A stretch of 63,852 nt of DNA, filler included, from Octopus bimaculoides (lineage: Eukaryota), in NCBI RefSeq assembly GCF_001194135.2. It is 5 parts of 5 records of this genome, joined end to end, with 100 filler letters (N's around TTAATTAATTAA, not from the genome) between each part and the next. Parts side by side here need not be neighbours in the genome. Positions count along the whole stretch, not along the records: positions 44,185 to 62,579 come from NC_068997.1; 4 more parts are not named here. One strand, given 5' to 3'. The notes under the pieces are model-generated. The model saw nothing but the letters and a program-made list of their open reading frames with translations, did not search any database and had not been told where the DNA came from. This document shows, piece by piece, positions 58,855-61,634 of the stretch. Numbering within the stretch: position 1 is the stretch's first letter; each line of letters begins with the position of its first letter. The position numbers were made by a program, and so were the translations under genes.

Positions 58855-59576
58855 TTGCTCGTAACTTCACACTGTATACATTAAACAATATTTCAATATT
58901 TGTCTCTCACTGGATAGATTTTTTTTAGTTTTTTGTTGGTGTTTCCTCAACGGAAAGGTACACTTTAAACTCTATGTTTGACAATCGGTGTTGATTTGTT
59001 AATATCCCTCGCTCGCAGCGGCTCGGCAATATGTACTAATCTCAACTTTTTCAGCTATACACTCTAGGGCGTTGCCCAAGCACCGCCGCTCTCCATTGTT
59101 TGAAACAGGTAAAAAAGTAAATGGATAAATGAATTGCCTTGCTATTGAATACATATATATCACCGCAAGGAATAATGGAAGAAACATACCTATGAAGATT
59201 TCTGACAAGTGCAAACATAAAAGGCTGGGTATAGTTGTTAGGACACAAAGGAAGGATGATGTACAGTCAAAGAAATTATTTGATTTACAAATGTGAATAT
59301 TTCTTCCAAAACTGTGAGAAAATAATGTTTATGACCAACTGCTTCGAAAACAATAATTATACCTACTTGTTTATAAGTTCATATGTTTAAATAATTTATG
59401 GGTGTCCTCGGGTATGTAAGGAAATGTTGAAGTGAGATTCCCGAAAACATACGATGGATTTGCTGGCTAATAAAGAAACAAGTTGTGAAAAAGTTTTCAA
59501 ATGCAATCTGTAACAGAAACAATAGAGTTTTTTCTTTTCTAAATCTCTCAGAGAGATTTATGCAGTAGTGATACGA

Positions 59577-59805
59577 TGAAGTAGTTGTATGCTGTCAACT
59601 TAATGTGGCAGTCCCATGAAGGGAATAATACTGCTGTTGGTTAGACCTAGGAAGCTGCACTGCTTCCTGTCGGCCTTGACACATAAGGACACAGGAAATG
59701 TGTCAAGGCCGACAGGAGGCAGTGCAGCTTCCTAGGTCTAAACAACAGTAGTATTATTCCCTTCAGGGGACTGCCACATTAAGTTGACAGCATACAACTA
59801 CTTCA
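59577..59805. repeat. Near-perfect palindrome: 108-bp arms, 13-nt loop, 4 mismatches
   Basis: Arms 59577-59684 and 59698-59805, compared base by base. Confidence 0.95.
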
Positions 59806-61634
59806 GAAACAATAGAGTTTTTTTCTTTTCTAAATATCAGCGATTCACACCAAGAATTTTTGTGTGCGTGTGTATGTGTGTATTTATATATGCATGTATG
59901 TTTGTGTGTGTGTGTGTGTTCTTTCATTCTTTTACTCTTTTCAGTCATTTGATTGCGGCCATGCATGTGTGTGCGTATCAGATAGTGTCCTTGCTTCCTA
60001 GCTAACTCACAGTCCAATGGCTAACAATGGCTACCAAGTGAAAGAATATATATATATGTATGTGTATGTGTTTGGTTGAGTTTATGTATTCATGTGTGCC
60101 TGTTGGAATCCATATCAAGTATTTGTCTTCGCCAGTCTTTTAGTCGATTTGACAATGTTGTTTCGGTAGTAAGTTTGCTTTCATGTTTTAGTCGAAATTA
60201 TGGACTACTAAATTATATAAAATGTAGTCTGGTTATCTCATTCGACAGCATACAGTGTAGAAGCCGGATCAATGGGGCCATATACAAATGTTGGTCTTTC
60301 TGGATGTATTTAAGTAAAATGTGGAACGCAAAGCAGTAAGGCGAAACTCTGACTGGTGCGCATGCGATTATAAAGTCATTCCGCTTGAAGCTGGTTGACG
60401 CCGAGCAAGCCATGGATATGGCGTCTGCACATTTCCGCTTAACGAGATAACACTTTAGTTAAGTGAAAATGAAGTGTGAATCAATGTACTGCACTTCGAT
60501 AACATCTATAATCACACCTTACTCACTTCGAAATACTGTGACACATTGAATAAAGTAATCCTGGATATGCTACACAGACACAAAAATGCACACATAAACG
60601 TATGCATATACACACGCACACATATAATGCTGATACACGGGGTACAAGGTTCATGGTTTCAGCATGTCACCGTGGAAAGCGAGAATCGTGTTAAACAAGG
60701 GAGACATACACAATTTAAACATGAATGGAAATGCATATCATAAATACGATTATCATGTGAGTGAATTTGGTAGACGGAAATTATACAGAAGCCCGACATG
60801 CTATTCACACACTATAGAAGGATTGGTTATCATCTGCGAACCCGGAACCTTCGTAAGCGATCTCCTTCACTAAACAGGTACATGTATGTTTGTTTGTGTA
60901 CATATATATATATATATGTACACGTGTGTGTGTGTGTGTGTACACATAGCGTCAACCAGTGAAAATGAAAATAATAATAATAATATAGATCAATAAGTAA
61001 GCTTAATTAGAATCGGAAGAATATCATATCACTATTAACTATCTAGTAGGCTTTAATGATTCTTATAGGATAACTTGACATTAGTCTATTATTTAATTAT
61101 CATCAAGTATTGTTTTTATCGTATCTCTGTTGTATATCTTATTCAAGAAAATCTCTAATTTCGTATACTTTACTAGTATAATTGAATCATCTAGATTACT
61201 ATTTTTTCTTTCCTCCGTTTATTACTTCGTAAATGACTTATTCTTTTTTCTTTGGCAAAAAAAATATTTAAGTATATCTTCTTGTCCTGTATTAATCAAA
61301 TACAGGACAAGACAAAAAAAAAACAACAAAACAAAAACAACAAAAAAAAATAAAGACACATGAAACATCTAATAAAGAAAAATAACACCTCGTATGAATA
61401 TATAATTGAGGAATTATCATACAAAGTTGGAGGTATCATATTGCTTAATTGACACCATCGTTGCTGTTGTTGTTATTGTTGCAGGATATGTTGGTGATGT
61501 TGTTGTTGTGGTAAATGTTATCATCATAGTTTTTGTTGATATTTTTCATTATTTTAGTTTGGACCTTGTTGATCAGTGGTCATATTGAACAGCGCAGTTT
61601 TCTTGTCTTTCATTTTCCTTTTTAGACTTTATCC

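What the first reader, a model, noticed from the sequence alone, without database searches (positions are those of the whole stretch)
59514..59835. 229-bp near-perfect fold-back flanked by a 31-bp direct duplication and a junction-spanning mini-palindrome
Seen: arms 59577-59684 and 59698-59805 (108 bp, 4 mismatches, two of them G.U-compatible in plus-strand RNA) with a 13-nt loop. The 259-bp insert (59545-59803) is bracketed by CAGAAACAATAGAG(T6/T7)CTTTTCTAAAT at 59514-59544 and 59804-59835. The right arm overlaps the second copy by 2 nt (CA). A perfect 10-bp/1-nt/10-bp palindrome (59540-59560) straddles the left junction. The loop 11-mer AAGGACACAGG also occurs at 34364-34374. Established: long palindromes with short loops are unstable, long dsRNA is an ADAR/Dicer substrate, and coleoids edit RNA heavily. 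Inference: either a recent snap-back/template-switch repair product or a retroposed hairpin RNA with a long TSD. If transcribed, it could be a hairpin endo-siRNA or editing locus, or a new fold-back element.
Basis: partly seen in the sequence, partly recalled or inferred. Interest (0 to 1): 0.72.

Follow-up and report, generated by a model that had tools for sequence, protein, structure and literature searches.

The report
Fold-back insertion flanked by 31-bp duplication
A 259-bp piece of foreign DNA that doubles back on itself was inserted once, a few million years ago, into repeat-rich non-coding DNA; it most likely records a copying enzyme that turned back on its own product, and nothing suggests it is a gene.

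Summary
There are two 108-nt inverted arms with 4 mismatches and a 13-nt loop. A 31/32-bp direct repeat brackets a 259-bp insert. The right arm and the second repeat copy share 2 nt (CA). A perfect 10-1-10 mini-palindrome straddles the left junction.

The anatomy reads as: TSD, a 32-nt extension on one side only, arm, loop, inverted arm, TSD. That is a single insertion at a 31-nt staggered break. No other copy and no local template exists in the 16 kb of resolved sequence. No public collection I could reach holds a relative.

The geometry matches the published signature of Penelope-like retroelement (PLE) insertions: head-to-head, 5'-truncated inverted copies with a 30-40-bp "tail" at one end. 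L1 twin priming fits much less well. I could not test membership, and no hammerhead ribozyme or coding remnant is present.

DNA-polymerase template switching (MMBIR/TMEJ) is the main rival. Two nested snap-back signatures fit either model.

Arm divergence puts the age at about 4-5 My, which is not fresh. There is no evidence for a functional hairpin RNA or for a new fold-back family; neither could be tested here. Interest is low to moderate.

The parts
59514..59544 (+). Left copy of the 31-bp direct repeat (T6), read as a target-site duplication. Its 3' end (…TTCTAAAT) is the inferred plus-strand primer end.
   Evidence: (D2). No extension beyond it.
59540..59560 (.). Perfect 10-1-10 mini-palindrome, TAAATCTCTC A GAGAGATTTA, straddling the junction between the repeat and the insert. 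It is either a short snap-back or half of a stem-loop in the donor with 5-nt microhomology to the target.
59545..59576 (-). 32-nt extension on one side only, with no counterpart at the other arm. It matches the PLE 'tail' in position and length, or is the part not re-copied during snap-back.
   Evidence: No similarity to the flanks. Tail literature.
59577..59684 (.). Left arm of the fold-back, 108 nt.
   Evidence: (I1).
59685..59697 (.). 13-nt loop AAGGACACAGGAA. Its first 12 nt (AAGGACACAGGA) match right-arm nt 8-20, AAGGCCGACAGGA, at 11 positions with one gap: a possible aborted first snap-back.
   Evidence: p about 0.015.
59698..59805 (.). Right arm of the fold-back, 108 nt. Its last 2 nt (CA) are shared with the right repeat copy, a microhomology junction.
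   Evidence: (I1).
59804..59835 (+). Right copy of the direct repeat (T7), 32 bp.

Best explanation
This is a one-off insertion made by target-primed, probably reverse-transcriptase-driven, synthesis at a break whose two nicks lay 31 nt apart. It is now a neutral relic.

Inferred steps:
1. The plus strand was nicked after …TTCTAAAT (59544). The minus strand was nicked 31 nt away, after …TTGTTTCTG.
2. The plus-strand 3' end primed copying of a foreign template, most simply an RNA whose sense is the present minus strand. This produced the 32-nt extension, then the 108-nt arm.
3. At the template's 5' end the new strand turned back, in one of two ways. Either it folded on itself and re-copied the arm (self-priming, after a short aborted attempt that left the loop). 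Or the minus-strand 3' end independently primed on the same template 32 nt further in (dual priming).
4. The inverted copy joined the other target end through a 2-nt CA microhomology.
5. Fill-in of the two 31-nt overhangs gave the direct repeat.

The layout (head-to-head, 5'-truncated inverted copies, a 30-40-nt extension at one end only, no poly(A), an AT-rich target) is the published signature of Penelope-like retroelements. Their protein cleaves and extends both target strands and starts reverse transcription at two internal sites about 30-40 nt apart.

Shown: the anatomy, its single-copy status in 16 kb, and the absence of a local template. Inferred: the RNA template, the enzyme, and the order of steps.
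For: - Anatomy (TSD 31, extension 32, arm 108, loop 13, arm 108, TSD).
- The repeat ends sharply on both sides.
- Both nick sites sit in T-rich/AT-rich sequence.
- The 153-nt unique unit has no copy or template in the flanks or in the rest of the 16 kb, so it came from elsewhere.
- PLE literature on structure: inverted 5'-truncated copy adjacent, 30-40-bp tail often at one end only (PMC8557442); a 31-bp tail on one of two inverted pLTRs, and palindromes at inverted junctions read as self-priming (PMC3846280).
- PLE literature on mechanism: both strands cleaved and extended, two RT start sites whose spacing equals the tail, AT-rich cleavage, an AC-rich initiation region (PMC11167929).
- The 40 nt around the two putative start sites are 63% A+C and 10% G.
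- Thirty-one PLE families are recently active in Octopus vulgaris (PMC13282606).
- Nested snap-back signatures: the loop resembles arm nt 8-20, and a mini-palindrome sits at the priming junction.
Against: - No sequence link to any PLE, LINE or SINE could be made, because no cephalopod genome or repeat library was reachable.
- No hammerhead ribozyme was found. No Pfam domain was found in eight of the piece's longer ORFs, the nearest ending about 240-300 bp from the insert.
- The arm-encoded peptides have no relative among 5.8 and 1.84 billion proteins.
- The 31-bp TSD is longer than the 8-10 bp reported for rotifer PLEs and the median 13 bp for L1.
- Both arms stop at the same point, which needs snap-back or a short template rather than two independent truncations.
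- There is no poly(A).
- A DNA polymerase switching templates would leave the same scars.
Confidence: 0.48

Rival explanations
1. DNA-polymerase template switching during replication or break repair (MMBIR/FoSTeS, or polymerase-theta end joining). The nascent strand left the template after copying the 31-bp segment and copied about 150 nt from a distant DNA template. It then snapped back on itself to copy the arm in reverse. It re-entered the original template 31 nt upstream through the CA microhomology, so it re-copied that segment.
For: - 2-nt microhomology at the return junction.
- Three nested fold-back signatures: the mini-palindrome, the loop resembling the arm, and the main fold-back. 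These are typical of iterative template switching.
- The flanking duplication needs no endonuclease in this model.
- No retroelement hallmark is present: no poly(A), ribozyme or ORF.
Against: - No template for the extension, arm or loop exists in the flanks or anywhere in the 16 kb of resolved sequence, although 2 kb are N gaps.
- From my own knowledge, polymerase-theta insertions are usually tens of bases, not 259.
- The one-sided 32-nt offset has no particular reason in this model, whereas it matches a known PLE feature.
Confidence: 0.28
2. It is one copy of a mobile fold-back family, or a retroposed hairpin RNA. In this reading the whole 259-nt fold-back existed as a transcript or element elsewhere and was inserted as a unit, with a long target-site duplication.
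For: A clean direct repeat brackets a discrete insert. Nothing excludes other copies outside the 16 kb.
Against: - No second copy in the piece.
- The termini are not inverted repeats, because the 32-nt left extension breaks the symmetry.
- From my own knowledge, a 31-bp duplication fits no cut-and-paste transposase, which make 2-11 bp.
- The model only moves the origin of the fold-back to a donor locus.
- No relatives were found in any collection scanned, though those collections hold little or no animal DNA.
Confidence: 0.1
3. It is a functional hairpin-RNA gene (endo-siRNA or miRNA-like precursor, or a selected ADAR-editing substrate). Its structure would then be maintained by selection, whatever its origin.
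For: - It is an extremely stable 108-bp duplex if transcribed.
- Two of the four mismatches are G.U on the plus strand.
- Long near-perfect dsRNA is the main hyper-editing substrate, and such loci are unusually common in octopus (PMC5625713).
Against: - No Rfam family reaches threshold; the best hit scores 31.5 bits against a gathering score of 70.
- Two wobble pairs on the same strand has a chance of 0.25. The other two mismatches break pairing on both strands.
- The stem is explained by its youth (about 3% divergence), so no selection is needed.
- No expression data were available.
- The surroundings are microsatellite- and repeat-rich non-coding DNA.
Confidence: 0.05
4. Assembly or library artefact in a gapped short-read scaffold.
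For: The piece has six N gaps. From my own knowledge, palindromes are a known chimera type.
Against: - The arms differ at 4 sites and the repeat copies differ by one T, whereas artefactual fold-backs have identical arms.
- The loop and the 32-nt extension are asymmetric.
- The structure lies inside a 3-kb gap-free contig (58617-61680).
- After the right arm the path continues into a forward copy of the repeat, not back along the left flank.
Confidence: 0.04

Closest known systems
Penelope-like element (PLE) insertions with inverted pseudo-LTRs and a one-sided 'tail'
   Same: Shared features: head-to-head inverted 5'-truncated copies; an extra 30-40 nt at one outer end only (32 nt here, 31 bp in Adineta Pen2a); flanking target duplication; AT-rich target; no poly(A); small palindromes at junctions attributed to self-priming. 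Sources.
   Different: - No sequence similarity to a PLE could be tested.
- No hammerhead ribozyme, RT or GIY-YIG remnant is present.
- The duplication is 31 bp against the reported 8-10 bp.
- Both copies are truncated at the same point after only 108 nt, so nothing but the extreme 3' end is present.
L1 twin priming (5'-inverted LINE-1 insertions; Ostertag and Kazazian 2001)
   Same: Both 3' ends of a staggered break prime on one RNA. This gives an inverted and a direct segment between target-site duplications, with microhomology at the internal priming site.
   Different: In L1 the two segments are adjacent parts of the RNA, overlapping by a median of 12 bp, with a median TSD of 13 bp and a poly(A) tail in more than 90% of insertions. 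Here the overlap is the whole 108 nt, the TSD is 31 bp and there is no poly(A).
Microhomology-mediated template switching (MMBIR/FoSTeS) and polymerase-theta snap-back insertions
   Same: Microhomology junctions, inverted copies made by snap-back on the nascent strand, flanking duplication from re-entry upstream, and several nested switches.
   Different: Templates are normally identifiable nearby, and none is present in 16 kb. The insert is longer than typical theta-mediated filler.
Hairpin-RNA (hpRNA) endo-siRNA loci and inverted-repeat ADAR substrates
   Same: A long, near-perfect intramolecular duplex with a short loop would be a Dicer or ADAR substrate if transcribed (for editing).
   Different: There is no evidence of transcription, processing, conservation or a target. 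Such dsRNA-forming loci are common in octopus, so the structure alone is not distinctive.
MITEs and Foldback DNA transposons
   Same: Long inverted arms with a short centre, flanked by a direct repeat.
   Different: The inverted repeat does not reach the left end of the insert (32-nt offset). The duplication is 31 bp rather than 2-11 bp. No other copies were seen.

Membership tests
Penelope-like element insertion | Sequence similarity to a PLE (RT plus GIY-YIG ORF, or a pLTR/3'-end consensus) | not testable with these tools
   No animal genome or repeat library was reachable. The arm peptides had no relatives. No Pfam domain was found in eight of the piece's longer ORFs. A 259-bp, 5'-truncated copy need not carry coding sequence.
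Penelope-like element insertion | Adjacent inverted 5'-truncated copy (head-to-head inverted repeat) | tested here: met
   Arms 59577-59684 and 59698-59805, compared with the descriptions.
Penelope-like element insertion | Optional 30-40-bp tail at one end only | tested here: inconclusive
   A 32-nt one-sided extension at 59545-59576 has the right place and length (literature). Whether it is the family's tail needs other copies.
Penelope-like element insertion | Hammerhead ribozyme in the pLTR (canonical clades) | tested here: not met
   No hammerhead hit at E<=10. This is not decisive. Naiad and Chlamys PLEs lack it, and in the anole element it lies at the ORF start, which could be beyond this truncation point.
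Penelope-like element insertion | Short target-site duplication at an AT-rich site | tested here: inconclusive
   A duplication is present and the nick sites are AT/T-rich. However, 31 bp exceeds the 8-10 bp reported in Adineta.
L1-type twin-primed insertion | Poly(A) tail at the 3' end | tested here: not met
   Neither end of the insert is A-rich.
L1-type twin-primed insertion | Inverted and direct segments are neighbouring parts of the source, with little overlap | tested here: not met
   Here the overlap is the full 108 nt, against a median of 12 bp.
MITE / Foldback DNA transposon | Terminal inverted repeats abutting a 2-11-bp duplication | tested here: not met
   The inverted repeat starts 32 nt inside the left boundary, and the duplication is 31 bp.
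MITE / Foldback DNA transposon | Multiple dispersed copies | tested here: inconclusive
   None in 16 kb. The genome-wide count is not testable here.
Templated insertion by MMBIR/FoSTeS/TMEJ | Microhomology at the switch junctions | tested here: met
   CA is shared by the right arm and the repeat. There may also be 5 nt (TAAAT) at the left junction.
Templated insertion by MMBIR/FoSTeS/TMEJ | An identifiable DNA template, usually nearby | tested here: not met
   No match for the extension, arm or loop in the flanks or the piece. The 2 kb of gaps and the rest of the genome remain unexamined.
hpRNA / miRNA gene | Membership of a described RNA family | tested here: not met
   The best Rfam hits are generic hairpin matches of 16-32 bits against gathering scores of 70-90.
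hpRNA / miRNA gene | Transcription and small-RNA or editing signal | not testable with these tools
   No expression data are available.

The most novel reading that the evidence does not exclude
The fold-back is one member of an undescribed non-autonomous retroelement family mobilised by Penelope-like enzymes. Because both target strands prime on the same short RNA, every insertion would create a ready-made 100-bp hairpin. This would be a systematic source of the long dsRNA that feeds heavy A-to-I editing or endo-siRNA production in coleoids.
Probability: 0.06. Interest if true: 0.6.

Novelty: new member of a known kind. Interest (0 to 1): 0.24.

Why it matters
If the leading reading holds, this is a compact, well-preserved example of how retroelement or repair synthesis can create a perfect hairpin-forming locus in one step. 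It would have arisen in a lineage (apparently an octopod) where such dsRNA-forming loci are unusually common and heavily edited.

It also illustrates the PLE 'tail plus inverted copy' signature reduced to its minimum. Repeat annotators can mistake that for a MITE or a miRNA-like hairpin.

On its own it is a single neutral insertion with no evidence of function.

Tried and rejected
- Other copies in the piece: blastn with word size 7 found none.
- Local templates for the extension, arm or loop in +/-500 bp: the best match was GCTTCCTAG--CTAACTCACAG at about 59992-60012, p about 0.05, treated as chance.
- Extension of the direct repeat beyond 31 bp: none.
- tRNA or SINE head: no tRNA found.
- Rfam: only microsatellite-driven miRNA hits and generic hairpin hits below threshold, and no hammerhead.
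- Pfam on eight ORFs: nothing.
- Exact-protein look-ups for three window ORFs: not on record.
- Protein searches with the arm/loop peptide and with the arm ORF: nothing.
- DNA pattern scans of metagenome, prokaryote-genome and viral collections gave only two 20-21-nt chance matches, L001 and L002.
- 'Arm = N-terminus of a PLE ORF': the arm's inner end starts with ATG, but the frame stops after 29 codons in both arms and has no homologue. The idea gains no support.
- Supplementary repeat libraries of two papers are not held.
- The single arm as a structured RNA: z = -1.1, rejected.

Full report
**1. Observation**

- The inverted repeat has arms 59577-59684 and 59698-59805: 108 nt, 96% complementary, 13 nt apart.
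- The four mismatched pairs are 59616/59766 (A.G), 59633/59749 (G.U), 59640/59742 (G.A) and 59664/59718 (U.G). The loop is AAGGACACAGGAA.
- A direct repeat, CAGAAACAATAGAG-T6/T7-CTTTTCTAAAT, lies at 59514-59544 and 59804-59835. It does not extend further on either side.
- The insert between the copies is 259 bp. The right arm and the second copy share CA.
- TAAATCTCTC-A-GAGAGATTTA (59540-59560) is a perfect 10-1-10 palindrome across the left junction.
- As RNA, the region folds at -219 kcal/mol against -79 +/- 5 for shuffles (z = -27). The other strand gives z = -26.

**2. Context**

- The piece (44185-62579) is 35% G+C and has six N gaps, so it is a gapped draft scaffold.
- It is dense in TG/TA/CA microsatellites.
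- It has no tRNA. No Rfam family reaches its gathering score; the many miRNA 'hits' are microsatellite matches. Eight of its longer ORFs, the nearest ending about 240-300 bp from the insert, have no Pfam domain.
- A composite SINE-like repeat with an internal microsatellite lies at about 53880-54680. A 44-bp fragment of it lies at 59919-59962, about 85 bp right of the insert.
- From memory, that repeat is the abundant octopus type. This is a lead to the organism, not a test.
- The fold-back sits in a gap-free 3-kb contig (58617-61680).

**3. Anatomy**

From left to right the locus reads:
- repeat copy 1 (31 bp);
- a 32-nt non-palindromic extension (59545-59576);
- the left arm (108 nt);
- the loop (13 nt);
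- the inverted right arm (108 nt);
- repeat copy 2.

The sequence after copy 2 (ATCAGCG…) is unrelated to the sequence after copy 1. The simplest history is therefore flank-A-flank, with a 259-bp insertion that duplicated A.

The 153-nt unique unit (extension plus arm plus loop) has no other copy and no plausible template in the flanks or anywhere in the 16 kb. It came from elsewhere.

Two smaller fold-back traces are nested in the structure.
- The mini-palindrome sits exactly where synthesis would have started from the plus-strand 3' end. About five comparable palindromes occur per 16 kb, so a hit on a given junction has a chance of roughly 1-2%.
- The first 12 nt of the loop match right-arm nt 8-20 at 11 positions with one gap (AAGGAC-ACAGGA against AAGGCCGACAGGA; p about 0.015 against random 13-mers of the contig). 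This looks like a short aborted turn-back before the full one.

A single arm on its own is not a structured RNA (z = -1.1).

**4. Age**

Four substitutions in 108 bp give a Jukes-Cantor distance of 0.038 between the arms. Including the repeat copies, it is 0.029 over 139 bp. With the Octopus vulgaris repeat clock (JC 0.09 to consensus = 25 My, PMC13282606), the event is about 4-5 My old. The Poisson range is 1-10 My. This holds only if that clock applies to this genome. The divergence and the asymmetric centre argue against a library or assembly chimera.

**5. Mechanism**

The geometry requires two 3' ends, 31 nt apart on opposite strands, each extended with the same-sense copy of one template. 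The two copies meet head to head.

Published work on Penelope-like elements describes this outcome.
- Insertions are heavily 5'-truncated, often with an adjacent inverted 5'-truncated copy. A 30-40-bp 'tail' is often present at one end only (PMC8557442).
- An Adineta copy has a 31-bp tail on one of two inverted pLTRs. Palindromes at inverted junctions are read as self-priming (PMC3846280).
- The purified anole PLE protein cleaves and extends both strands of an AT-rich target. It starts reverse transcription at two internal RNA sites whose spacing equals the tail, within an AC-rich region (PMC11167929).

Here the one-sided extension is 32 nt. Both nick sites are AT/T-rich. The 40 nt around the two putative start sites are 63% A+C with 10% G. 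PLE families are recently active in octopus.

L1 twin priming has the same logic but fits poorly. Its two cDNAs overlap by a median of 12 bp, its TSDs have a median of 13 bp, and more than 90% of insertions carry poly(A) (PMC12016303).

I therefore favour a target-primed, probably PLE-type, abortive retro-insertion with snap-back or dual priming (confidence about 0.5).

**6. Limits and rivals**

I could not link the arm to any element.
- No animal genome or repeat library was reachable.
- Scans of the metagenome, prokaryote-genome and viral collections gave only two chance 20-mers.
- Three protein-level searches found nothing.
- There is no hammerhead ribozyme.
- The ATG-initiated frame at the arm's inner end stops after 29 codons.
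- The 31-bp duplication is longer than reported for PLEs.

DNA-polymerase template switching (MMBIR/FoSTeS, or polymerase-theta snap-back) explains the microhomology, the nested fold-backs and the flanking duplication equally well. It lacks only a visible template. I give it about 0.28.

The remaining readings are a mobile fold-back family or a retroposed hairpin RNA (0.10), a selected hairpin-RNA gene (0.05) and an artefact (0.04).

**7. Function**

Nothing tested points to function.
- If the locus is transcribed, for instance inside an intron, the duplex would be an ADAR or Dicer substrate. Such near-perfect dsRNA-forming loci are reported as exceptionally frequent in Octopus bimaculoides, and most hyper-editing falls in them (PMC5625713). 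That makes this locus typical rather than special.
- The two G.U-compatible mismatches on the plus strand have a chance of 0.25.

**8. Verdict**

The structure is real and well described. Its origin is best explained by known mechanisms. It is a new instance of a known kind, and its interest is low to moderate. One BLAST against the source genome would settle its class.

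Noticed in passing
window 53880-54680 (interrupted by N gap 54225-54514); fragment at 59919-59962: Composite SINE-like repeat (…CAGTCATTTGACTGCAGCCATACTGGAGCACCGCC… then a microsatellite, then …TTCCGTATACCGAATCCACTCACAAGG…GCAGTGGGATTGAG…). A 44-bp, 79.5%-identical fragment lies about 85 bp right of the fold-back. 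From memory it resembles the very abundant octopus repeat with an internal microsatellite. A protein-level probe for it found nothing.
   Followed up: partly
window 46458-46571, 50878-51223, 51777-52407, 54225-54514, 58012-58616, 61681-61724: Six runs of N (assembly gaps, 2030 nt in all). The longest 'inverted repeats' and 300-nt 'direct repeats' listed by the repeat finder for the piece overlap these N runs and the adjacent microsatellites, so they look like artefacts. I did not inspect them individually.
   Followed up: partly
window 61620-62350: Long imperfect (ATC)n/(GTC)n trinucleotide tracts on the plus strand (GAT = Asp on the minus strand), with open frames of homopolymeric residues. 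I did not determine whether this is an acidic-repeat exon or just a microsatellite.
   Followed up: no
window 61312-61358: A-rich tract (ACAAAAAAAAAACA-like units, about 45 nt) that could be the poly(A) tail of an old retroposed element.
   Followed up: no
window 54790-54862: Long (CTAT)n tetranucleotide microsatellite just downstream of the SINE-like repeat.
   Followed up: no
window 59545-59600 (minus strand): In the inferred RNA sense, the arm's outer end and the 32-nt extension contain two adjacent 16-nt units that match at 12 of 16 positions (CATACAACTACTTCAT / CGTATCACTACTGCAT). The right arm ends just after ACTACTTCA. This may reflect repeated initiation motifs, but by my rough hand estimate it is not statistically distinctive.
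   Followed up: partly
window 59595-59684 (minus) and 59698-59751 (plus): Each arm begins, at its inner end, with ATG. The frame opened runs 29 codons in the left arm. In the right arm an arm-specific C-to-T change (59749) makes a TAG after 17 codons. The TGA after codon 29 is shared by both arms, so it was present in the donor. No homologue was found.
   Followed up: yes
whole piece 44185-62579: Rfam E-value-mode hits to mir-297, mir-466, mir-3149 and similar families (up to 56 bits, against gathering scores of 85-100) all fall on TG/TA microsatellites. They are low-complexity matches, not miRNA genes.
   Followed up: yes
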